This document shows positions 28,780 to 43,586 of a DNA stretch of 64,000 nucleotides, piece after piece. This DNA is from Laetmonice hystrix (Eukaryota), in NCBI GenBank assembly GCA_965235115.1, contig OZ249442.1, forward strand, positions 1,798,001 to 1,862,000. The letters are read 5' to 3'. Under the pieces are notes generated by a model. It was given only the letters and a program-made list of their open reading frames with translations, made no database searches and was not told where the DNA came from. The position numbers were made by a program, and so were the translations under genes. Position 1 is the first letter of the stretch. Every line of letters begins with the position of its first letter.

Positions 28780-30133
28780 AATATTATGGTAACTGTTTCA
28801 ATTTTGTCCATCTCAAAGGTCAGGCAAGAACATGATATTTGAATCATAGTCACATTAAAGTGCAGAACTACCCCGACTTGTACGCGACGAGTCATCCTTG
28901 ACCAAGTCGAACAGTTCATTGGTCATCCTGAAGTACCTTTTAAATCTTGTATCGCTGATTGTCTCCAGCCGAGTAATCTCGTGAAATTCTCCATAATTGT
29001 GCCCTCAGGTTTAAAGTGTCGTGAACCCCAAACTTTTTGGGTCGATGAGCTCGTTGTTCAAGAAGTAGAGCTTCTTTGGATTCCGATCCGATTCGGCGGC
29101 CACACACCGATTAGGCCCCCCCCCCCCCCCCACATTCCAAAAACCCTAGATCCGCCACTAATATTAGTTTCAAGGCCTATGAACAGAGACTCAGCACAGC
29201 GCGTTGAGGCAAAAGTATCAGTGCTGAGACGCCGGAAGTACGTCGCCAGAATCACAATTGGGGAGCGATTTTTTTTCTGCATGCACTTGCCATTGGAGCG
29301 TGCCGCAACCCGCTGTACTGAGTCTGTTTGCCCTCGTCCACACATAAAAACGCTAAAGTCGACCACGCGAACTCGGCCATGGAGGCGAGTTTACCAGTAT
29401 GTCATGTACATGGACATGGGAACGTGTGACAAAAATAATTTTTAAAAATATAAGATCAAACTCTAGAGTAAACTTAACACGTATATGATTGTACCATCAA
29501 AACATAGGCCTACATGCTGAGTTCCAGTGTTTGTTATAAACCATGGACATGGTTGGATATAAGTGATAAATGGAATTAAACTGAGCACATTTTGCCTGCC
29601 GACCATCTGTCCTAACTAAGCTGTGCCAATGCACCTGTGTACCTAGAGCGTCAGAGGGACTCGTAGTAAAACAACTCTGTCTGACGGAACCTGTGCGGGT
29701 GGTCAAGTCGTGACCTTGCCTCACGTACACGGTGCAAACCGTGTGGCCAAACCTCTCCATTATTTGATTTAGGAATACCGAACTATTCAAGACTGTTTTT
29801 TTCACCGCATTGACAAGAGAATAGGTGCATTGTTTTCGAGACATACAATGAGATATACTCTGTTTTTGTCCCCACGTCATCATCATTCCTCTCCCGGGTC
29901 CCGGTTCCGACCAAAACTGAAGTAAGTAAAAAAGTTAGTTTCGGCCAGAAAGTGTCATTGTTTTCCTGATTCCTCTCAATAAAAATTATTATAAAAGAAA
30001 TCTAGAAATTATCGTTACATTTCTTATGAGTTGCTTGTTCATTATTAGGCCTAGGATTATTTTTCATCGTGTACTGGCCCTACAATGAAGGGAATCGATT
30101 GGTAAGGGACAGAAATCTGAAATAACCAAAATA

Positions 30134-31568
30134 TTGAATGCTACCACACGATCGTGGTTACAGGCCTATGTTTTGTCCTGTAACATTGAATGCTACCACA
30201 CGATCGCGGTTACAGGCCTATGTTTTGTCCTGTAACATTGAATGCTACCAGACCATCGCGGTTACAGGCCTATGTGTTGTCCTGTAACATTGAATGCTAC
30301 CACACCATCGTGGTTACAGGCCTATGTTTTGTCCTGTAACATTGAATGCTACCACACCATCGCGGTTACAGGCCTATGTTTTGTCCTGTAACATTGAATG
30401 CCACCACACGATCGTGGTTACAGGCCTATGTTTTGTCCTGTAACATTGAATGCTACCACACCATCGTGGTTACAGGCCTATGTTTTGTCCTGTAACATTG
30501 AATGCTACCACACCATCGCGGTTACAGGCCTATGTTTTGTCCTGTAACATTGAATGCTACCAGACCATCGTGGTTACAGGCCTATGTTTTGTCCTGTAAC
30601 ATTAAATGCCACCATACCATCGTGGTTACAGGCCTATGTTTTGTCCTGTAACATTGAATGCTACCACACGATCGTGGTTACAGGCCTATGTTTTGTCCTG
30701 TAACATTGAATGCTACCACACGATCGTGGTTACAGGCCTATGTTTTGTCCTGTAACATTGAATGCTACCACACCATCGTGGTTACAGGCCTATGTTTTGT
30801 CCTGTAACATTGAATGCCACCACACCATCGTGGTTACAGGCCTATGTTTTGTCCTGTAACATTGAATGCTACCAGACCATCGTGGTTACAGGCCTATGTT
30901 TTGTCCTGTAACATTGAATGCTACCACACCATCGTGGTTACAGGCCTATGTTTTGTCCTGTAACATTGAATGCTACCACACCATCGTGGTTACAGGCCTA
31001 TGTTTTGTCCTGTAACATTGAATGCCACCACACGATCGTGGTTACAGGCCTATGTTTTGTCCTGTAACATTGAATGCTACCACACCATCGTGGTTACAGG
31101 CCTATGTTTTGTCCTGTAACATTGAATGCTACCAGACCATCGTGGTTACAGGCCTATGTTTTGTCCTGTAACATTGAATGCTACCAGACCATCGTGGTTA
31201 CAGGCCTATGTTTTGTCCTGTAACTGAATGCTACCACACCATCGTGGTTACAGGCCTATGTTTTGTCCTGTAACATTGAATGCTACCACACCATCGTGGT
31301 TACAGGCCTATGTTTTGTCCTGTAACTGAATGCTACCACACCATCGTGGTTACAGGCCTATGTTTTGTCCTGTAACAATGAATGCTACCACACCATCGTG
31401 GTTACAGGCCTATGTTTTGTCCTGTAACATTAGCTAACATTGAATGCTACCACACCATCGTGGTTACAGGCCTATGTTTTGTCCTGTAACATTAGCTAAC
31501 ATTGAATGCCACCACACCATCGTGGTTACAGGCCTATGTTTTGTCCTGTAACATTGAATGCTACCACC
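30134..31568. repeat. 52-bp minisatellite
   Basis: ttgaatgctaccacaccatcgtggttacaggcctatgttttgtcctgtaaca. Confidence 0.95.
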
Positions 31569-32039
31569 TGTAGACCCCCCCCCCCCCTTGGCAACCATTT
31601 TGTCTTGTTCTCCCATGGATAGAAAGTATCCGAACTTTCTGAATTGACCATGCTGCCCCCCTGATCCTGAATCTGCCCCTGGGATGTTTACAGTTAGGTG
31701 TGCGGTTGGTCTCACCTGAAGTTGAATGTTGAGTGTGTGGAGAGCCTATGCATGACCGTGTTTAAACCGCCAGAGGGCGCGGCCATGCACGGGCCGGCCA
31801 TGCACGGGCCGGCCAGGCGTTTGGTCGGCGGCTGGCGGGAGGGGGTGGGAGAGGCGGGAGGGGGTGGGAGGGTGCCCTCGGCGCCGCCACCGGACGTCCG
31901 CGCACTCGCCCCTCGACAAGACGTCATCAGTCAACGCCACCTGGTGGCAGACAGAGAGCGGTGAGCGTCCACAGCCGGCCGTGGACGCTGCACGGAGGGG
32001 GGAGGAGTTTAAAAAAAGATAAATACACCAGGTATACAT

Positions 32040-33367
32040 CGTTGGACAGGAACCGTCGGGATACAGAATCTGGCTGAGATAAACACTATAAACATTGATG
32101 AACTCGGATACTGGTTGGACAGGAACCGTCGGGATACAGAATCTGGCTGAGATAAACACTATAAACATTGATGAACTCGGATACTGCAGGAACCGTCGGG
32201 ATACAGAATCTGACTGAGATAAACACTATAAACATTGATGAACTTGGATACTGCAGGAACCGTCGGGATACAGAATCTGGCTGAGATAAACACTATAAAC
32301 ATTGATGAACTCGGATACTGGTTGGACAGGAACCGTCGGGATACAGAATCTGGCTGAGATAAACACTATAAACATTGATGAACTCGGATACTGGTTGGAC
32401 AGGAACCGTCGGGATACAGAATCTGGCTGAGATAAACACTATAAACATTGATGAACTCGGATACTGGTTGGACAGGAACCGTCGGGATACAGAATCTGGC
32501 TGAGATAAACACTATAAACATTGATGAACTCGGGTACTGCAGGAACCGTCGGGATACAGAATCTGGCTGAGATAAACACTATAAACATTGATGAACTCGG
32601 ATACTGGTTGGACAGGAACCGTCGGGATACAGAATCTGGCTGAGATAAACACTATAAACATTGATGAACTCGGATACTGGTTGGACAGGAACCGTCGGGA
32701 TACAGAATCTGGCTGAGATAAACACTATAAACATTGATGAACTCGGATACTGGTTGGACAGGAACCGTCGGGATACAGAATCTGGCTGAGATAAACACTA
32801 TAAACATTGATGAACTCGGATACTGCAGGAACCGTCGGGATACAGAATCTGGCTGAGATAAACACTATAAACATTGATGAACTCGGATACTGCAGGAACC
32901 GTCGGGATACAGAATCTGGCTGAGATAAACACTATAAACATTTATGAACTCGGATACTGCAGGAACCGTCGGGATACAGAATCTGGCTGAGATAAACACT
33001 ATAAACATTGATGAACTCGGATACTGGTTGGACAGGAACCGTCGGGATACAGAATCTGGCTGAGATAAACACTATAAACATTGATGAACTCGGATACTGG
33101 TTGGACAGGAACCGTCGGGATACAGAATCTGGCTGAGATAAACACTATAAACATTGATGAACTCGGATACTGCAGGAACCGTCGGGATACAGAATCTGGC
33201 TGAGATAAACACTATAAACATTGATGAACTCGGATACTGCAGGAACCGTCGGGATACAGAATCTGGCTGAGATAAACACTATAAACATTTATGAACTCGG
33301 ATACTGCAGGAACCGTCGGGATACAGAATCTGACTGAGATAAACACTATAAACATTGATGAACTCGG
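32040..33367. repeat. 73/67-bp minisatellite ending about 10 nt before the secreted-protein ATG
   Basis: gttggacaggaaccgtcgggatacagaatctggctgagataaacactataaacattgatgaactcggatactg, about 19 copies. Confidence 0.95.
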
Positions 33368-33376
33368 GTTGACACC

Positions 33377-36300
33377 ATGCGAGCAGTGTGCAAGTCTCAG
33401 AGGACGCTCCTGGTCTGGGTGTTAGTGTTTGTCTTTCTCTCCACGGCAATCGCTAGGAGATCACGTCGGAGATCAACGACAGGTATGTGATAGCTTCCGT
33501 TCACGTCACTGGTAGATCATCGACTTGGTCTCGCTTCCGTTCACGTCACTGGTAGATCATCGACTTGGTCTTGCTTCCGTTCACGTCACTGGTAGATCAT
33601 CGACTTGGTCTCGCTTCCGTTCACGTCACTGGTAGATCATCGACTTGGTCTCGATTCCGTTCACGTTACTGGTAGATCATCGACTTGGTCTCATATGTGC
33701 AGTCAGTTGAAAGCTATAGATCCTAGATCTACAGCCTACACGGTGGCAGGCCTATTATGTACTTAGTTAGGGTACCATTTAATCTTCAAGGGTGGGGGGG
33801 GGGGGGTCTTTCTTCGTTAAATATTTTTTACACTTCCAAAACCAAACAAGTTCTTTTTCCCCTTGTGATTTTGTTTACATGTGTGGCCAGGACACATTTT
33901 TCTGCACACTTTTTTCTGCACCATTCTCAACAAACTTTTTTTTATCGTAAAACCAAACATATAGTCGCCCGGTTTTACGGTGACCCGCTCTTTTAACATG
34001 GAAATGGCTGAAGAAATCTTTTCAGATAAAATGAAAGCCGTTTATTAATGGTCATGTCATCGGTGACAGTCGACAGTTTAACGTTAGGCACTGCATTTTC
34101 TCTTCATTAAAATGAATAGCGTTTTTAATGCATGTGCATATATTATGGACAATCATGTTTAAAACAGTTTTCAAAGCCATTACACCGTTCGTTCCTTCGA
34201 GGAAAGACAATGAAGAGCGAATAACTTACCATCTACAAGCATTAAAACATGAACGTTAACCATGAAGTAATATTGACATGGCATATAGAATGAAATATTA
34301 TATATAGCTCATTAATGTCAGAAATACCTCCATACAATGAGGTGACTGCATTATATGTGAGCGACAGTTCTATCATAATATTATTAACATTAATATAACG
34401 TTAATAAAATCAATCTCCCTTTAAAAAACACGGTTCATTTAATATGTTTATGACTGCGATTTTTATAAGCCCATAGGACCCCGCCAGAGGGCCAGAGGGC
34501 CAATTTTCAAAAACAGTGACACGACGATCGTCTAAAAATAGTGTCGCTCTGTAAAAACAATTTTGCACTTGGTAAATTATGAGAAATAGATAACTAGCAG
34601 AAGATGTACTAATTCTGTTAACACATGACGCATATTTTTATGACTATAAAGTCTATGAGAATCTCCTAGTATACCGGGTGGGCCAAAACATTTTGGAACA
34701 CTCTTTTCTTGACTGTAATTTCTATCATTTTCACCGCAATGTCGTAATATTTGGAACATGATATCATCTGGTTATTTGGGGTCTGTGATACAAATTCCAG
34801 ATTAATGGGTCGAAACGTCTTCAAATAGGGCTATTTCTAAAGATTCGTGACGAAAATTGCAATGCCGGACCAGCAGGGCCATCAGCGTGAAGCCGCACCT
34901 CTTTTAAGCGGGAAACTGCCCTGAAAAACGGAGTCCCATAGCGTTGAATGACCCAGTTTTCTTGGTGTGTAGACAGTGTGCAGTGTGCAAGGCAGGGTTG
35001 TTGCCACTCTGTCTGAATGACGTTACGTCAAATGTATGAAATGTCTGAAAAAGTCTATAAAGGTCGCAAGCAAAAATTCGCTGAGAACGAACTGAAGGAG
35101 AAAATTCGGGAAAGGTGGGAGGGAATTACTCTAGAAGAAGTCAGGAAGTCAGCCGGAATATTCAAAAAGAGACTAAGGGGTGTGTGTGAACACTGAACAG
35201 GATGGGGGTCGCATCGATCACCTTTTCATTTCAACTGAAATAGGTGGGTGATACTTACATGGTTCTCCAGCATTGCATTTTTCGACATGTGATGTTTGAT
35301 TTGTTTCCACATAAAGAGTTTTTGGCCTATCTGCCTAAAACTTTCACCACAAAATGCTATTAACCATATAACGTGATGCCTTAAATATCAGTGACAAACT
35401 ATGAAAATTGTAGAAGCTTTAGTCAAGTAAAGAGTGTTCCAGACACAGCGGGACCAACTCTGCGGAGGACGCCTGGTCCGGCATTGCAATTTTTGACACG
35501 CAGTTTTTAAAATAACGCTATTTTTAGACATTTTGACCCATTTATCTGAACTTTGTACCACATGCCCCAATTAACCAGATGATATCATGTTGCAAATAAT
35601 ATGACATTGGAGTTAAAATTATAAAAGTTACAGTCAAGAAAAAAGTTTCCAAAATCTTTAGGCCCACCCGATATATTCAGCGATAAAACCGATATGATGC
35701 AAAACAGGATTTTTTAAAAGTTTCTTTTATCGTAATCTTAACGGTGTCTCGCGGGCCCCGGTGTAACGATTTCAAGTTCCCCCCTCATTCGAGTTCCCCC
35801 CCGGGAACTTGAAAACGTTTTCAAATTCCTCCTCCAGGAGCTTGAAAACGTTTTCAAATTCCCTCCCGCGATTTAACTTTCCCTCCCCCAGGGACTTGAA
35901 AACGTTTTAAGTTTATAAATAAAATATAGGCCTACCTTATTATTTTATGACAAATTTTAAATGTCGATACTTTTTGCCCTTCTTATTTCACCACATCTAG
36001 GGGGTAGGTCCTAGGCCTAGATATCTTTTGTCAGCTTGTTTCTCTCCATTCATTTTACTGACCGTTCATTTTCACCCTAACCTAAACCTAACCCTAACCC
36101 AAACCCTAACCCTAGCCCTAACCCTTTCCCAAGGGGACGCGTATTAACGTTTTTCACGTTCTCGTGGGGGAAAATGAAAACATTTTCAGAATCCTAGGGG
36201 GAATTTGAAAATGGGGGGATGAATCTGAAAACGGTTTTCAAATTCCTCCCCGGGAATTTGAAAACGATTTCAAATTCCTGGGAGGAAATTTGAAAACGTT

Positions 36301-38114
36301 TTCAAATTCCCGGGGGGAATTCGGGAGGGGGGAATTTCAAAACGTTACACCGGGGACGACTCATTATGGCATTGTCAATATCGGTGTCCCATGACTGATG
36401 CAGCACTATTAAAACTGCGTATACGCAATCCAGTCCAACTCAGCTCAACTCTTCAAACTATGAAAACACCTACTCACAGCTATATAGGTGCTAGGGTTGT
36501 GTGTTTTGTAAAGAATAAATTTTAATTTTTTTTATATGTGAAAATCACGAAACGAAAATTAACCAACGCGATATGTCTTTCCAGAGTATACCTAAAGGTA
36601 TATTCTATATTTATCTCTCCGTTTCAGTTCGCCGGGCCCTGCACTATACCCGCAGTCGGGAGGACGACTCCGCGAGCCTGGAGAAGAGTTGGGAGGACAG
36701 CTGGGAGGACAGCCGGGAGTACAGCCGGGAGAACAGCCGGGAGTACAGCCGGGAGGACAGTCGGGAGTACAGTCGGGAGTACAGCCGGGAGGACAGTCGG
36801 GAGGACAGTCGGGAGGACAGCCGGGAGGACGACCGTTCATTCCGGAGTACTGATAGACCAACCTACCACCGGCGCCGCTCAAACAATCATTACAGTTCCC
36901 ATCATCTCCGCCGGAGGAGCTCTGCCCGCCAGGACCGACATACACCAGGGCAGTTACTAACAGCGCAAAAATCAACCCTGCACAGAAAAAGGAAAGTGAG
37001 GAAAATAAAACGCTACGAGAGATACCCAGCTTCACATCTCAGCTATGAACGGCTTGCTGATAAAGTTTCCGAGTACAGCAAACCGACAGAGTATTCTGTC
37101 CCCTTGCGGCCAGTACGAAAACCTCACGACGATCATGGTTATTTCCCGGGAGGGAGTTTAAAACAGCACAGACAAGATAAGTTTTACCGAGACCGTTCAC
37201 GACTGTCGAGTTCGGGATTCAAAGTGTTCCACCAGTCCCCTGTTGTGAGCGGTCAGGGAACCTACCATAGTGGACGTCAGTCCCGCCAGGATGACCGCTA
37301 CAGTCCTTACATTGTGGACCACCATCAGGAGGACATGTACAGGACCATCCATGTCGACAACACCCCATACTACCGCCAACCCATCACAGCTAATGTCTAC
37401 GAGTCTGACCACCAGCCCGCTGACCACCACCAGCCCGCTGACCACCACCAGCCCGCTGACCACCAGCCCGCTGACCACCAGCTACAGGAGGTTCACGCCA
37501 AGGGGTACGATACTGTGGACCGTCACAACCCAGAAGGCCACGACAACCATCACAATGACGACGTCACCCACAGCTATGAGCGCTACCGTCACATAAACTA
37601 CGATCGTGTTCCTAGAGACGGCAAATCGTACCACCGGGAATGGCAGCAATCGCAATCTTCCAGTCACCAAAGTATGGATGACGATTCGCAGTTATATTAT
37701 GACACAGGCCAGGCCCACAGTGACACCACTTACCGCAGTGCCCGAACTCCTCACTCTGATCGCACCGAACTTTCTCACATAGATTCAACTCTGATGGCGA
37801 ACACCAAACAACATCCGCTCGCATCTCTAAAACATGCCAAGATCAAATTTATCTGCAACAGTTTCAACCGAAATCTAGAAGTTGTTCGCAGTCAGATCCG
37901 GCGACGGCGGAGTACGGGCGAGGACGACCGAAATCTAGAAGTTGTTGGCAGTCAGACCCGGCGACGGCGGAGTACGAGAGAGGACGATAGACAAGTAAAC
38001 CTTTACGTACACGTGCCTGATGACCGACCTAAACCCATCATCCATCACTTCGGACCGAAACTGGTTTTTCTGTGCATAGCTAACACCAACAAAAGGGATA
38101 CCGCAGGGACTTAA
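33377..38114 (+). CDS. Unrecognised secreted low-complexity protein, about 530 aa, two coding exons
   Basis: Exon 33377-33482 (GACACC-ATG; MRAVCKSQRTLLVWVLVFVFLSTAIARRSRRRSTT, signal-peptide-like, donor AG/GTATGT, phase 1) joins acceptor ccgtttcag/TT at 36628 in the frame of the 36573-38114 ORF. Contains SRED/SREY repeats, DHHQPA repeats and RRRRS sites. Confidence 0.75.
33494..33692. repeat. 40-bp repeat x5 just after the signal-peptide exon donor
   Basis: cttccgttcacgtcactggtagatcatcgacttggtctcg. Confidence 0.9.
34672..35673 (+). mobile_element. Decayed Tc1/mariner-type DNA transposon in intron 1 of the secreted-protein gene
   Basis: Long imperfect TIRs (taccgggtgggccaaaacattttggaac... 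/ ...tttccaaaatctttaggcccacccgata, over 100 bp) flanked by TA. Residual ORF 35041-35196 EKVYKGRKQK...LKEKIRERWEGITLEEVRKSAGIFKKRLRGVC followed by GGRIDHLF resembles a transposase C-terminus. Confidence 0.8.
35756..36355. mobile_element. Non-autonomous TIR element with subterminal repeats and an internal telomere-like (CCCTAA)n tract
   Basis: TIR ccccggtgtaacg...cgttacaccgggg; repeated ttgaaaacgttttcaaattcc subterminal motifs in both orientations; cctaacctaaacctaaccctaacccaaaccctaacc at about 36078-36126. No clear TSD. Confidence 0.7.
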
Positions 38115-38127
38115 CTGATATCGTATT

Positions 38128-38872
38128 AAGTTATACAAGTTACACAAGTATTAAAGCTGTGACTTTCGTAACTCAAGTTATACAAGTTACACAAGTATTA
38201 AAGCTGTGACTTTGGTAACTCAAGTTATACAAGTTACACAAGTATTAAAGCTGTGACTTTCGTAACTCAAGTTATACAAGTTACACAAGTATTAAAGCTG
38301 TGACTTTCGTAACTCAAGTTATACAAGTTACACAAGTATTAAAGCTGTGACTTTCGTAACTCAAGTTATACAAGTTACACAAGTATTAAAGCTGTGACTT
38401 TCGTAACTCAAGTTATACAAGTTACACAAGTATTAAAGCTGTGACTTTCGTAACTCAAGTTATACAAGTTACACAAGTATTAAAGCTGTGACTTTCGTAA
38501 CTCAAGTTATACAAGTTACACAAGTATTAAAGCTGTGACTTTCGTAACTCAAGTTATACAAGTTACACAAGTATTAAAGCTGTGACTTTCGTAACTCAAG
38601 TTATACAAGTTACACAAGTATTAAAGCTGTGACTTGAGTAACTCAAGTTATACAAGTTACACAAGTATTAAAGCTGTGACTTTCGTAACTCAAGTTATGC
38701 AAGTTACACAAGTATTAAAGCTGTGACTTTCGTAACTCAAGTTATACAAGTTACACAATTATTAAAGCTGTGACTTTCGTAACTCAAGTTATACAAGTTA
38801 CACAAGTATTAAAGCTGTGACTTTTGTAACTCAAGTTATACAAGTTACACAATTATTAAAGCTGTGACTTTC
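38128..38872. repeat. 47-bp minisatellite right after the secreted-protein stop
   Basis: aagttatacaagttacacaagtattaaagctgtgactttcgtaactc. Confidence 0.95.
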
Positions 38873-40226: not shown

Positions 40227-43200
40227 GGCTCTCCCTAACTCCTTCTCCCTAACCCGGACTCAGGCTCTCCCTAACTCCTTCTCCCTAACCCGGACTCAGG
40301 CTGTACTCAGGCTGTCCCTAACCCGAACTCAGGCTCTCCCTAAGCCGGACTCAGGCTCTCCCTAACCCGAACTCAGGCTGTCCCTAACCCGGACTCATTC
40401 TCCCTAACCCGGACTCAGGCTCCCCCTAACCCGGACTCATTCTCCCTAACCCGAACTCAGGCTGTCCCTAACCCGGACTCAGGCTCTCCCTAACCCGGAC
40501 TCAGGCTCCCCCTAACCCGGACTCAGGCTCTCCCTAACCCGAACTCAGGCTCTCCCTAACCCGGACTCAGGCTCTCCCTAACCCGAACTCAGGCTCTCCC
40601 TAACCCGGACTCAGGCTCTCCCTAACCCGGACTCAGGCTCCCCCTAACCCGGACTCAGGCTCTCCCTAACCCGGACTCAGGCTCTGTCTGACCCGGAATC
40701 AGGCTCTCCCTAACCCGGACTCAGGCTCTCCCTAACCCGGACTCAGGCTCTCCCTAACCCGGACTCATTCTCCCTAACCCGGACTCAGGCTCCCCCTAAC
40801 CCGGACTCAGGCTCTCCCTAACCCGGACTCAGGCTCTCCCTAACCCGGACTCAGGCTCTCCCTAACCCGGACTCAGGCTCTCCCTAACCCGGACTCAGGC
40901 TCCCCCTAACCCGGACTCAGGCTCTCCCTAACCCGGACTCAGGCTCTCCCTAACCCGGACTCAGGCTGTCCCTAACCCGAACTCAGGCTCTGTCTAACCC
41001 GAACTCAGGCTATCCCTAACCCGGACTCAGGCTGTACTCAGGCTCTCCCTAACCCGGACTCAGGCTCTCCCTAACCCGAACTCAGGCTCTCCCTAACCCG
41101 GACCCAGGCTCTCCCTAACCCGGACTCATTCTCCCTAACCCGGACTCAGGCTCTCCCTAACCCGAACTCAGGCTATCCCTAACCCGGACTCATTCTCTCT
41201 AACCCGAACTCAGGCTGTCCCTAACCCGGACTTAGGCTCTCCCTAACCCGGACTCAGGCTCTGTCTGACCCGGACTCAGGCTCTCCCTAACCCGGACTCA
41301 GGCTCTCCCTAACCCGGACTCAGGCTCCCCCTAACCCGGACTCAGGCTTTCCCTAACCCGGACTCAGGCTCTCCCTAACCCGGACTCAGGCTCCCCCTAA
41401 CCCGGACTCAGGCTCTCCCTAACCCGGACTCAGGCTCTCCCTAACCCGGACTCAGGCTCTCCCTAACCCGGACTCAGGCTCTCCCTAACCCGGACTCAGG
41501 CTGTCCCTAACCCGGACTCAGGCTCTCCCTAACCCGGACTCAGGCTGTCCCTAACCCGGACTCAGGCTCTCCCTAACCCGGACTCAGGCTCCCCCTAACC
41601 CGGACTCAGGCTCTCCCTAACCCGGACTCAGGCTCTCCCTAACCCGGACTCAGGCTCTCCCTAACCCGGACTCAGGCTCTCCCTAACCCGGACTCAGGCT
41701 CTCCCTAACCCGGACTCAGGCTCTCCCTAACCCGAACTCAGGCTCTCCCTAACCCGGACTCAGGCTCTGTCTGACCCGGACTCAGGCTCTCCCTAACCTG
41801 GACTCAGGCTCTCCCTAACCCGGACTCAGGCTCCCCCTAACCCGGACTCAGCCTCTCCCTAACCCGGACTCAGGCTCTCCCTAACCCGGACTCAGGCTCT
41901 GTCTGACCCGGACTCAGGCTCTCCCTAAGCTGGACTCAGGCTCTCCCTAACCCGGACTCAGGCTCCCCCTAACCCGGACTCAGGCTCTCCCTAACCCGGA
42001 CTCAGGCTCTCCCTAACCCGGACTCAGGCTCTCCCTAACCCGAACTCAGGCTCTCCCTAACCCGGACTCAGGCTCTCCCTAACCCGGACTCAGGCTGTCC
42101 CTAACCCGAACTCAGGCTCTGTCTAACCCGAACTCAGGCTATCCCTAACCCGAACTCAGGCTCTCCCTAACCCGGACTCAGGCTCTCCCTAACCCGGAAT
42201 CATTCTCCCTAACCCGGACTCAGGCTCTCCCTAACCCGAACTCAGGCTATCCCTAACCCGGACTCATTCTCCCTAACCCGAACTCAGGCTGTCCCTAACC
42301 CGGACTCAGGCTGTCCCTAACCCGGACTCAGGCTGTCCCTAACCCGGACTCAGACTGTCCCTAAACCGGACTCAGGCTCTCCCTAACCCGAACTCAGGCT
42401 CTCCCTAACCCGGACTCATTCTCCCTAACCCGGACTCAGGCTGTCCCTAACCCGAACTCAGGCTCTCCCTAACCCGGACTCATTCTCCCTAACCCGGACT
42501 CAGGCTGTCCCTAACCCGGACTCAGGCTGTCCCTAACCCAGACTCAGGCTGTCCCTAACCCGGACTCAGGCTCTGTCTAACCCGGACTCAGGCTCTCCTT
42601 AACCCGGACTCAGGCTCTCCCTAACCCGGACTCAGGCTGTCCCTAACCCGGACTCAGGCTGTCCCTAACCCGGACTCAGGCTGTCCCTAACCCGGACTCA
42701 GGCTCCCCCTAACCCGGACTCAGGCTCTCCCTAACCCAGACTCAGGCTGTCCCTAACCCGGACTCAGGCTCTCCCTAACCCGGACTCAGGCTCTCCCTAA
42801 CCCGGACTCAGGCTCTCCCTAACCCGGACTCAGGCTGTCCCTAACCCGGACTCAGGCTCTCCCTAACCCGAACTCATTCTCCCTAACCCGGACTCAGGCT
42901 CTCCCTAACCCGAACTCATTCTCCCTAACCCGGACTCAGGCTCTCCCTAACCCGGACTCAGGCTGTCCCTAACCCGGACTTAGGCTGTACTAAGGCTGTC
43001 CCTAACCCGGACTCAGGCTGTACTCAGGCTGTCCCTAACCCGGACTCAGGCTGTCCCTAACCCGGACTCAGGCTGTCCCTAACCCGGACTCAGGCTCTCC
43101 CTAACCCGGACTCAGGCTCTCCCTAACCCGAACACAGGCTCTCCCTAACCCGAACTCATTCTCCCTAACCCGAACTCAGGCCGTTCCTAACCCGAACTCA

Positions 43201-43586
43201 GGCTCTCCCTAACCCGAACTCATTCTCCCTAACCCGGACTCAGGCTCCCCCTGACCCGGACTCAGGCTCTCCCTAACCCGAACTCAGGCTGTTCCTAACC
43301 CGAACTTAGGCTCTGTCTAACCCGGACTCATTCTCCCTAACCCGAACTCAGGCTCTGTCTAACCCGAACTCAGGCTCTGTCTAACCCGGACTCAGGCTGT
43401 CCCTAACCCGGACTCATTCTCCCTAACCCGAACTCATTCTCCCTAACCCGGACTCAGGCTGTCCCTAACCCGGACTCAGGCTCTCCCTAACCCGGACTCA
43501 GGCTGTCCCTAACCCGGACTCAGGCTCTCCCTAACCCGGACTCAGGCTCTCCCTAACCCGGACTCAGGCTCTCCCTAACCCGAACT
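40227..43586. repeat. 22-bp satellite with a telomeric hexamer in each unit, about 150 copies
   Basis: ccctaacccggactcaggctct. Confidence 0.97.

What the first reader, a model, noticed from the sequence alone, without database searches (positions are those of the whole stretch)
33377..38114. Orphan secreted protein with Fam20C-type S-x-E repeats, His/Asp repeats and furin-type sites
Seen: a signal-peptide exon absent from the ORF track joins in phase to a 1.5 kb exon. The product has about 12 tandem S-[RW]-E-[DYN] units (SWEDSWEDSREYSRENSREYSRED...), a basic block (HRKRKVRKIKRY), DHHQPA repeats, His/Asp/Tyr-rich stretches, almost no Cys, and polybasic sites (RRSRRR, RRRS, two RRRRS). Established: S-x-E is the Fam20C secretory kinase consensus, and phosphorylated acidic/basic disordered proteins typify biomineral matrix, cement and adhesive proteins. 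Inference: a lineage-specific extracellular matrix, biomineralisation or adhesive precursor processed into several peptides.
Basis: partly seen in the sequence, partly recalled or inferred. Interest (0 to 1): 0.7.

Follow-up and report, generated by a model that had tools for sequence, protein, structure and literature searches.

The report
Orphan charged repeat protein gene, annelid
This is probably a real worm gene, found in no other organism, for a long, floppy, highly charged protein that looks built for export from the cell; no RNA data confirm the splice and nothing supports the proposed shell, cement or glue role.

Summary
The sequence observation holds. Exon 1 (33377-33482) joins exon 2 (36628-38114) in phase through a good GT-AG pair. 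The product is 530 aa with a textbook-looking signal peptide, 12 S-[RW]-E-[DYN] units, a basic block, DHHQPA repeats, three R-x-[KR]-R sites and 3 Cys.

GC content steps from 0.32-0.41 to 0.54 exactly at the proposed exon borders. Both exons are single copy in the 627-Mb genome, which other agents of this scan call an annelid.

Nothing related was found: Pfam, two very large protein searches and the ESM Atlas gave no relative. AlphaFold gave mean pLDDT 41.5, which fits disorder.

No RNA evidence was reached. Three runs are clearly DNA. A fourth small run covers only part of exon 2 and none of the unique intron, so it may be RNA. The junction is untested.

The "Fam20C" signal is one 12-bp DNA unit amplified 12 times. 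Outside it S-x-E is barely enriched. Fam20-family genes do exist in the genome.

Secretion is plausible. A nuclear RS/NLS-like protein, a membrane-anchored protein and an unused ORF remain open. The matrix, biomineral or adhesive role is unsupported.

The scan has noted other orphan secreted precursors with convertase motifs elsewhere in this genome, but not this gene. Interest is modest.

The parts
33377..33482 (+). Exon 1: start codon in a caccATG context and 35 codons plus 1 base. It encodes a signal-peptide-like leader (n-region with +3 charge, 11-residue apolar core, STAIA c-region) followed by RRSRRRSTT. The donor is ACAG|GTATGT.
   Evidence: GC is 0.538 against 0.36-0.41 around it. It is the only hit of a strict leader-plus-donor scan in 128 kb, and the only relaxed hit between 28074 and 36627. 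It is single copy in the genome.
33483..36627 (+). Intron (3145 nt). It holds a locus-specific 40-bp array (33493-33692) and two elements with terminal inverted repeats (34661-35684 and 35756-36355). It ends in a pyrimidine tract plus CAG.
   Evidence: DNA runs show the two elements at 100-1000 times the unique depth.
36628..38114 (+). Exon 2: 494 codons plus a stop. It encodes the whole disordered, Arg/Ser/Asp/His/Tyr-rich body of the protein.
   Evidence: GC is 0.542. The in-frame stretch upstream of the acceptor (36573-36627) has GC 0.327, like the intron. Single copy. No Pfam family.
36691..36830 (+). 12-bp tandem array, 11.7 copies, encoding the S-[RW]-E-[DYN] units. An in-frame 24-bp length allele is seen at 36757.
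36981..37016 (+). Basic block HRKRKVRKIKRY (residues 154-165). It could be a convertase or heparin-binding-like site if the protein is secreted, or a classical NLS-like motif if it is intracellular.
   Evidence: The motif reading is inference.
37405..37482 (+). 18-bp tandem array encoding the DH(H)QPA units.
37867..37987 (+). 60-bp duplication, 2 copies at 93% identity. Each copy encodes NLEVV-x-SQ-x-RRRRS-x-x-EDD and so carries one canonical R-x-R-R site.
32040..33367 (.). 73-bp minisatellite, 19 copies, ending 9 nt before the start codon. Each unit carries a TATAAA-like word. It is found only at this locus.
38128..38872 (.). 47-bp minisatellite, 16 copies, starting 14 nt after the stop codon. 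Each unit carries ATTAAA, first at 38150, a possible poly(A) signal. It is found only at this locus.

Best explanation
This is a taxon-restricted, single-copy, two-exon protein-coding gene of an annelid. Exon 1 supplies an ER signal peptide, probably cut after A-I-A at residue 26. Exon 2 supplies a roughly 500-residue intrinsically disordered polyampholyte with pI about 9.5 (Arg 14%, Ser 12%, Asp 9%, His 7.5%, Tyr 6%).

The most likely working model is a secreted, non-globular protein. It would act through charge and through metal or aromatic contacts, as a matrix, mucus, coating or coacervate-type component. It may be phosphorylated on its S-R-E-D array by a Golgi Fam20-type kinase and trimmed at R-x-[KR]-R sites.

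Shown: the ORF, the splice motifs, the phase, the composition step at the borders, single copy, no homologues, and no confident fold.

Inferred: transcription, use of this junction, secretion, phosphorylation, cleavage, and any material role.
For: - In-phase GT-AG model with a 530-aa open frame.
- GC is 0.54 in both exons against 0.32-0.41 in the intron and flanks. The step falls at the acceptor, not at the internal ATG 36573.
- The leader exon is the only strict signal-peptide-plus-donor candidate in 128 kb, and the only relaxed one in the 8.5 kb upstream of the acceptor.
- Exon 1 fills 106 of the 125 unique bases between two locus-specific arrays.
- Arrays inside the ORF have periods 12, 18 and 60, all in frame, and the length allele is an in-frame 24 bp. 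Flanking arrays have periods 73, 40 and 47.
- No stop or frameshift appears in the alternative haplotype, and pN/pS is about 0.45.
- The mature part has an even Cys count (2).
- Fam20 domains are present at 3-4 or more loci.
- FAM20C kinases are proposed to phosphorylate secreted adhesive proteins in another annelid (PMC12621633).
- A small run, X4, holds pieces of exon 2 at depth 6-8 but none of the unique intron. That is what an RNA-type run would show.
Against: - There is no RNA record and no junction read. X4's nature is unknown and it does not cover exon 1, the junction or the first 600 nt of exon 2.
- pN/pS is not significantly below 1 (p = 0.13).
- Exon 2 is about 9 times more polymorphic than the unique intron, so there is no simple sign of constraint.
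- Five Arg lie in the six residues right after the predicted cleavage site. Together with a 16-17 residue apolar stretch, that is atypical for a cleaved leader.
- There are no N-glycosylation sequons.
- No signal-peptide predictor could be run.
- There are no homologues, so conservation cannot be tested.
Confidence: 0.4

Rival explanations
1. The gene is real but the protein is not secreted. Exon 2 would be translated from its own ATG at 36573, or joined to some other upstream exon. The product would be a nuclear or cytoplasmic disordered protein of the RS/RE-rich, speckle- or nucleolus-like kind.
For: - HRKRKVRKIKRY matches a classical monopartite NLS (established motif knowledge).
- Arg plus Ser make up 25% of the protein, and the S-R-E-D/Y units resemble the mixed-charge R/S/E/D tracts of splicing-related proteins.
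- RRRS and RRRRS fit R-R-x-S basophilic kinase sites, and S-R-E-D fits the S-x-x-D/E CK2 pattern (15 such sites).
- There are no N-glycosylation sequons and almost no Cys.
- An ATG (36573) with a TATATAG word about 90 nt upstream exists.
- The junction is unverified.
Against: - The stretch 36573-36627 has intron-like GC (0.327). It reads as a pyrimidine tract plus CAG, with the GC step exactly at 36628.
- A high-quality leader exon in the right phase with a consensus donor lies upstream.
- There is no RRM or any other nuclear-protein domain.
- The units are tetrapeptides rather than runs of RS dipeptides.
Confidence: 0.2
2. Exon 1 is used, but its apolar segment is an uncleaved membrane anchor. 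The polybasic RRSRRR would act as the cytosolic juxtamembrane stop, leaving the 500-residue charged tail in the cytosol. The result would be a single-pass membrane protein with an N-out, C-in topology and an intracellular disordered, phosphorylatable tail.
For: - The apolar stretch T10-A26 is 16-17 residues long.
- The 15 residues after it carry +7 charge against +3 before it. By the positive-inside and charge-difference rules (established knowledge), that favours a cytosolic C-flank.
- The intracellular reading of the NLS-like, CK2-type and R-R-x-S motifs then applies too.
Against: - An n-region with three positive charges and a short polar c-region with A at -3 and -1 is the classic pattern of a cleaved signal peptide.
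- Translocating an N-terminus that carries three basic residues is unfavourable.
- No topology predictor could be run.
Confidence: 0.15
3. The frame is open but is not a working gene. It could be a young, untranslated or decaying ORF in a repeat-packed region about 1.8 Mb from one end of the contig, kept open by chance and by in-frame slippage.
For: - No run on record as RNA holds it.
- There are no homologues anywhere, and the Atlas recognition score lies in the range of shuffled sequences.
- Nucleotide diversity in exon 2 is high, and 8 of 13 changes are non-synonymous.
- The surroundings are dominated by minisatellites and transposon remnants.
Against: - A 494-codon frame is very unlikely by chance. 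My estimate is about 2e-4 per window even without its repeats.
- GC is raised in both exons with sharp borders.
- The splice signals and the leader are coherent.
- Both haplotypes are intact, and the length variation is in frame.
Confidence: 0.2

Closest known systems
Sabellariid tube-cement proteins (Pc-3/Sa-3 polyphosphoserine proteins; His-rich basic Pc-4, Pc-5 and Sa-5)
   Same: They are annelid proteins with a signal peptide, low complexity, few Cys, and Ser-rich acidic and His-rich basic chemistry. FAM20C kinases have been proposed as the modifying enzymes (PMC12621633).
   Different: No sequence similarity was detected in any search. Ser is 12% here against about 73% in Pc-3. This protein is 530 aa against 128-405 aa for those. 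Acidic and basic chemistry sit in one chain here rather than in separate proteins. It is not known whether this worm builds a cemented tube, or where the gene is expressed.
Vertebrate Fam20C substrates of the SIBLING/SCPP type (osteopontin, DMP1, caseins)
   Same: They are secreted, disordered and Cys-poor, with clustered S-x-E motifs. Some are also cut by convertases (my own knowledge).
   Different: Those form a vertebrate-restricted gene family, with no homology to this protein. They are net acidic, while this protein has pI 9.5. The S-x-E sites here lie in a single array with Arg at +1.
RS/RE mixed-charge domains of nuclear splicing-related proteins (U1-70K-type, SR-related proteins)
   Same: They have Arg/Ser/Glu/Asp periodic low-complexity tracts, basic NLS-like blocks, predicted disorder and dense kinase consensus sites (my own knowledge).
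   Different: This protein has no RRM or other domain. Its unit is a tetrapeptide with Tyr, Trp or Asn variants. A signal-peptide-like exon lies upstream. It also has a long His/Asp/Tyr-rich part that is not typical of SR proteins.
His-Pro-rich metal-binding repeats (histidine-rich glycoprotein GHHPH units) and His-rich worm jaw or squid beak proteins
   Same: They have short tandem His-containing units (DHHQPA here) in a secreted disordered context. Coacervation of His-rich disordered beak peptides is documented (PMC6884462; title and abstract seen).
   Different: Only about 4 units are present and His is 7.5% overall. Gly is 3%, whereas jaw and beak proteins are Gly/His-rich (my own knowledge). 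No homology was found.

Membership tests
Fam20C (Golgi casein kinase) substrates | Entry into the secretory pathway through a cleaved signal peptide | tested here: inconclusive
   A heuristic n/h/c-region and -3/-1 rule is met. However, the junction is unverified, a polybasic run follows the cleavage site, and no SignalP-type tool was available.
Fam20C (Golgi casein kinase) substrates | S-x-E/pS motifs | tested here: met
   There are 16 S-x-E motifs, 12 of them in the 12-unit array. Outside the array 4 are observed against 1.8 expected.
Fam20C (Golgi casein kinase) substrates | A Fam20-type kinase encoded by the same organism | tested here: met
   PF06702 matches above the cut-off at loci on contigs C1, C8 and C6. 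Which of them is Fam20C-like rather than the Fam20B xylosylkinase was not resolved.
Fam20C (Golgi casein kinase) substrates | Serines actually phosphorylated in the secreted protein | not testable with these tools
   This needs phosphoproteomics.
Proprotein-convertase (furin-type) processed precursors | R-x-[KR]-R motif in a lumenal, accessible segment | tested here: met
   RSRR at residue 28, RRRR at 460 and RRRR at 480, plus KIKR at 161. Being lumenal depends on the unverified leader.
Proprotein-convertase (furin-type) processed precursors | Repeated or conserved product peptides, amidation or spacer signals | tested here: not met
   There is no G-[KR]-[KR] signal. The only duplicated unit is the 20-residue segment that carries the site itself.
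Sabellariid cement proteins (Pc/Sa-1 to -5) | Sequence similarity or a matching composition class | tested here: not met
   There were no hits in searches of 5.8 billion and 1.84 billion proteins. The composition differs from the values given in PMC12621633.
SR / SR-related nuclear proteins | RRM or another nuclear domain, plus an RS-dipeptide domain | tested here: not met
   Pfam finds no domain. The repeats are S-R-E-D/Y tetrapeptides, not RS dipeptide runs.
Protein-coding gene (expressed) | Spliced transcript with the 33482^36628 junction | tested here: inconclusive
   Runs X1-X3 are DNA because their contigs cross the intron borders. X4 covers only 37252-37839.

The most novel reading that the evidence does not exclude
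This would be a species- or genus-restricted secreted polyampholyte carrying two opposite chemistries in one chain. One is an S-R-E-D array turned into a dense phosphate block by a Golgi Fam20 kinase. The other is a basic His/Tyr/Arg-rich metal-binding block. Convertase cuts at the RRRR and RSRR sites would separate them, so that the pieces coacervate into an extracellular material such as a tube lining, mucus, jaw or chaetal matrix. Its unusually high allelic diversity would then reflect fast evolution of a structural or defensive secretion.
Probability: 0.1. Interest if true: 0.55.

Novelty: new member of a known kind. Interest (0 to 1): 0.25.

Why it matters
If the gene is expressed and its product secreted, it adds one more lineage-specific, disordered, repeat-built secreted protein to an annelid genome. 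According to other notes of this scan, that genome already holds several such orphans.

Proteins like this are where new extracellular materials and adhesives come from. The S-R-E-D array would be a clean natural test substrate for invertebrate Fam20 kinases.

As it stands it is an unverified gene model with no relatives, so its value is as an annotation lead rather than a discovery.

The way locus-specific minisatellites stop 9-14 nt from every coding border is a small, neat illustration of constraint on exons in a repeat-rich region about 1.8 Mb from one end of the contig.

Tried and rejected
- **Pfam, coding frame:** no family at E up to 1 on the exon 2 product.
- **Pfam, other frames:** only sub-threshold noise on ORFs in other frames and on the minus strand, and on the transposon-remnant ORF. 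Exon 2 is therefore not a frame-shifted relic of a known domain.
- **Word-indexed search of 5.8 billion proteins:** 8000 candidates were scored and none reached E 0.01, not even the protein itself.
- **Exhaustive phmmer over 1.84 billion representatives:** one hit, P0001, at E 2.9e-4. It aligns only to the repeat and basic region at about 30% identity and is itself an internally duplicated, unrelated-looking protein. I rejected it as compositional.
- **ESM Atlas:** no usable hit and a low recognition score.
- **AlphaFold2, single sequence:** no residue above pLDDT 70, so no fold search was worthwhile.
- **Paralogue search in the own genome:** only low-complexity matches to the repeat. None were found with the non-repeat part.
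- **Run search for RNA:** no holder is on record as RNA. Laid contigs show no joint at 33482/36628.
- **Relaxed signal-peptide scan:** too permissive to give a useful chance estimate, at about 1 candidate per 3 kb per strand.
- **Bacterial promoter and terminator scan:** irrelevant for this eukaryote.
- **Literature search for the repeat words:** no biological hit.
- **Not done:** the spliced 530-aa protein has no reference form. It was never sent to the exact-match tools (look-up of encoding contigs, the listing of cluster members), and all searches used the 494-aa exon 2 product.
Full report
**What is there**

- An ATG at 33377, in a caccATG context, opens 106 nt that end in ACAG|GTATGT.
- 3145 nt downstream, a pyrimidine-rich tract ending in CAG precedes 36628.
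- The last G of exon 1 and the first TT of exon 2 make a Val codon. The joined frame runs 530 codons to the stop at 38112-38114.
- The exon 1 frame on its own is only 37 codons, which is why it is missing from an ORF list.

The product has these features:
- It begins MRAVCKSQR, then an 11-residue apolar core, then S-T-A-I-A, followed at once by RRSRRRS.
- Residues 56-103 hold 12 S-[RW]-E-[DYN] units, encoded by a 12-bp DNA array (36691-36830, 11.7 copies, 91% matches).
- The block HRKRKVRKIKRY lies at residues 154-165.
- About four DH(H)QPA units come from an 18-bp array (37405-37482).
- A 60-bp duplication (37867-37987) gives two copies of a 20-residue unit, each with RRRRS.
- Composition is Arg 13.8%, Ser 11.7%, Asp 9.1%, His 7.5% and Tyr 5.7%, with 3 Cys (one in the leader). 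The pI is about 9.5 and GRAVY is -1.45 for the precursor and -1.6 for the mature chain.
- Strict R-x-[KR]-R motifs occur at residues 28, 460 and 480. The two RRRS sites have His or Leu at P4 and are only dibasic.

**Is the gene model real?**

Several independent sequence properties favour it.
- *Composition.* GC is 0.538 in exon 1 and 0.542 in exon 2. It is 0.33-0.41 in the intron and 0.32 downstream. The in-frame stretch upstream of the acceptor, which includes the internal ATG at 36573, has intron-like GC of 0.327. Coding-type composition therefore starts at 36628, not at that ATG.
- *The leader exon stands out.* A strict scan asked for an ATG, a positive n-region, a 10-residue apolar core, small residues at -3 and -1, and a GTRNGT donor. 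It finds this exon and nothing else on either strand of the 64-kb window. I set those criteria after seeing the exon, so the scan is biased. The relaxed version is very permissive, but even it finds no other candidate between 28074 and 36627.
- *Single copy.* Both exons occur once in the 627-Mb genome and there are no paralogues, so this is not a transposon ORF.
- *Flanking arrays.* Three minisatellites occur nowhere else in the genome, and each stops 9-14 nt from a coding border. They are a 73-bp array ending 9 nt before the ATG, a 40-bp array starting 11 nt after the donor, and a 47-bp array starting 14 nt after the stop. Exon 1 fills 106 of the 125 unique bases between two of them.
- *Array periods.* The arrays inside the ORF have periods of 12, 18 and 60, all multiples of three. 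The flanking arrays have periods of 73, 40 and 47.
- *Allelic differences.* Contigs of the sequenced sample differ from the assembly by an in-frame 24-bp deletion in the 12-bp array and by 13 substitutions in exon 2. None is a stop or a frameshift.

**What is missing**

The run search found four runs of one sample, and none is on record as RNA.
- Runs X1-X3 have contigs that cover the unique intron and cross the intron-exon 2 border, at a depth of the same order as the exon. They are genomic DNA.
- X4 is small, with 58 Mb of contigs. It holds three pieces of exon 2 (37252-37437, 37508-37657, 37689-37839) at depth 6-8, plus transposon sequence.
- X4 holds nothing of the unique intron, exon 1, the junction or the first 600 nt of exon 2.
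- That unevenness is what an RNA-type run would give. Another agent's note on this genome mentions "RNA-type contigs" (s1-319913). The library type is still unknown, so I count this only as a hint of transcription.

Population signals are weak.
- 8 non-synonymous against 5 synonymous changes give pN/pS of about 0.45. This is not significantly below neutral (p = 0.13).
- Exon 2 has about nine times the variant density of the roughly 1030 nt of unique intron (13 against 1; Fisher p = 0.011). The variants cluster at 37249-37364 and 37618-37653.
- I cannot explain this excess. Fast or diversifying evolution, gene conversion, or a hidden second copy in the sample are all possible.

**Relatives and fold**

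No relative and no confident fold were found.
- Pfam finds nothing in the coding frame or in ORFs of other frames.
- The word-indexed search of 5.8 billion proteins returned nothing, not even the protein itself.
- An exhaustive phmmer run over 1.84 billion cluster representatives returned one borderline hit at E 2.9e-4. It aligns at about 30% identity to the repeat and basic region only, and I read it as compositional.
- The ESM Atlas gives no usable neighbour. Its recognition score lies in the range that shuffled sequences reach.
- Single-sequence AlphaFold2 gives mean pLDDT 41.5 with no residue above 70. It shows only a short helix (exon 2 residues 412-428) and a small hairpin near the C-terminus.
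- By charge and hydropathy the mature chain lies far on the disordered side: mean hydropathy 0.32 against a boundary of 0.42.

The protein is therefore an orphan that is predicted to be largely disordered.

**How it most likely works**

Other agents of this scan identify the genome as an annelid. They report several other orphan secreted precursors with convertase motifs in it; I did not verify those.

My best reading, at about 0.4, is a secreted, non-globular polyampholyte.

- The S-x-E signal comes from one 12-bp unit amplified by slippage. Outside it there are 4 sites against 1.8 expected, and two of those sit next to the array.
- The genome does encode Fam20-domain proteins at three or four loci or more.
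- FAM20C kinases have been proposed to phosphorylate secreted cement proteins in the annelid Sabellaria (PMC12621633). A kinase-substrate relation is therefore feasible.
- Nothing links the protein to mineral, cement or adhesive. It has no similarity in sequence or composition class to Pc/Sa cement proteins, no repeated product peptides and no amidation signals.

**Rivals**

The same motifs have a coherent intracellular reading.
- KRKVRK-type blocks are classical nuclear localisation signals.
- R-R-x-S is a basophilic kinase site.
- S-R-E-D fits the CK2 pattern S-x-x-D/E.
- R/S/E/D periodic tracts typify splicing-related nuclear proteins.
- There are no N-glycosylation sequons.

If exon 2 is translated from 36573 or joined to another exon, the protein would be nuclear or cytosolic (0.2).

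If exon 1 is used but not cleaved, the protein would be membrane-anchored (0.15). The 16-17 residue apolar stretch is followed by +7 charge in 15 residues, against +3 before it. By the positive-inside rule that would place the long tail in the cytosol.

An unused or decaying ORF cannot be excluded without RNA (0.2). Its length, composition and coherent signals argue against that reading.

**Verdict**

Orphan status is well supported, and function is unknown beyond "disordered, highly charged, probably exported".

Noticed in passing
window 32040-33367, 33493-33692, 38128-38872: Three minisatellites with periods of 73, 40 and 47 bp each start or stop 9-14 nt from a coding border of the gene. They occur nowhere else in the 627-Mb genome, so they arose in place from the gene's own flanks and intron start. 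Each 73-bp unit carries a TATAAA-like word and an ATG. Each 47-bp unit carries ATTAAA.
   Followed up: partly
window 36628-38114 versus 33792-34611 and 36416-36627: Exon 2 shows 13 substitutions and a 24-bp in-frame indel between the sample contigs and the assembly. About 1030 nt of unique intron show only one (Fisher p = 0.011). The variants cluster at 37249-37364 and 37618-37653, and 8 of the 13 are non-synonymous. This is unexplained.
   Followed up: partly
window 34661-35684: An element with inverted terminal arms of about 180-220 nt (82% complementary) has an internal 59-aa ORF remnant. In the DNA runs it sits at about 100-1000 times the unique depth. It is a high-copy DNA-transposon derivative inside the intron.
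   Followed up: partly
window 35756-36355: A second high-copy element has terminal inverted repeats (31-nt arms, 90% complementary) and nested palindromic 32-bp units. It contains a short telomere-type (CCCTAA)n run at 36074-36125.
   Followed up: no
window 31770-32000: A GC-rich island (GC 0.61) has short G-rich repeats and a GACGTCA word, just upstream of the 73-bp array, followed by an A/T-rich TATA-like stretch at about 32008-32025. It may be a promoter or a non-coding first exon for this gene or for a neighbour.
   Followed up: no
window 30133-31567 and 40305-43500: There are further long arrays: a 52-bp unit with 27 copies, and a GC-rich, strongly C-skewed 22-bp unit with more than 78 copies. 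The gene sits in a very repeat-dense stretch about 1.8 Mb from one end of contig C7.
   Followed up: no
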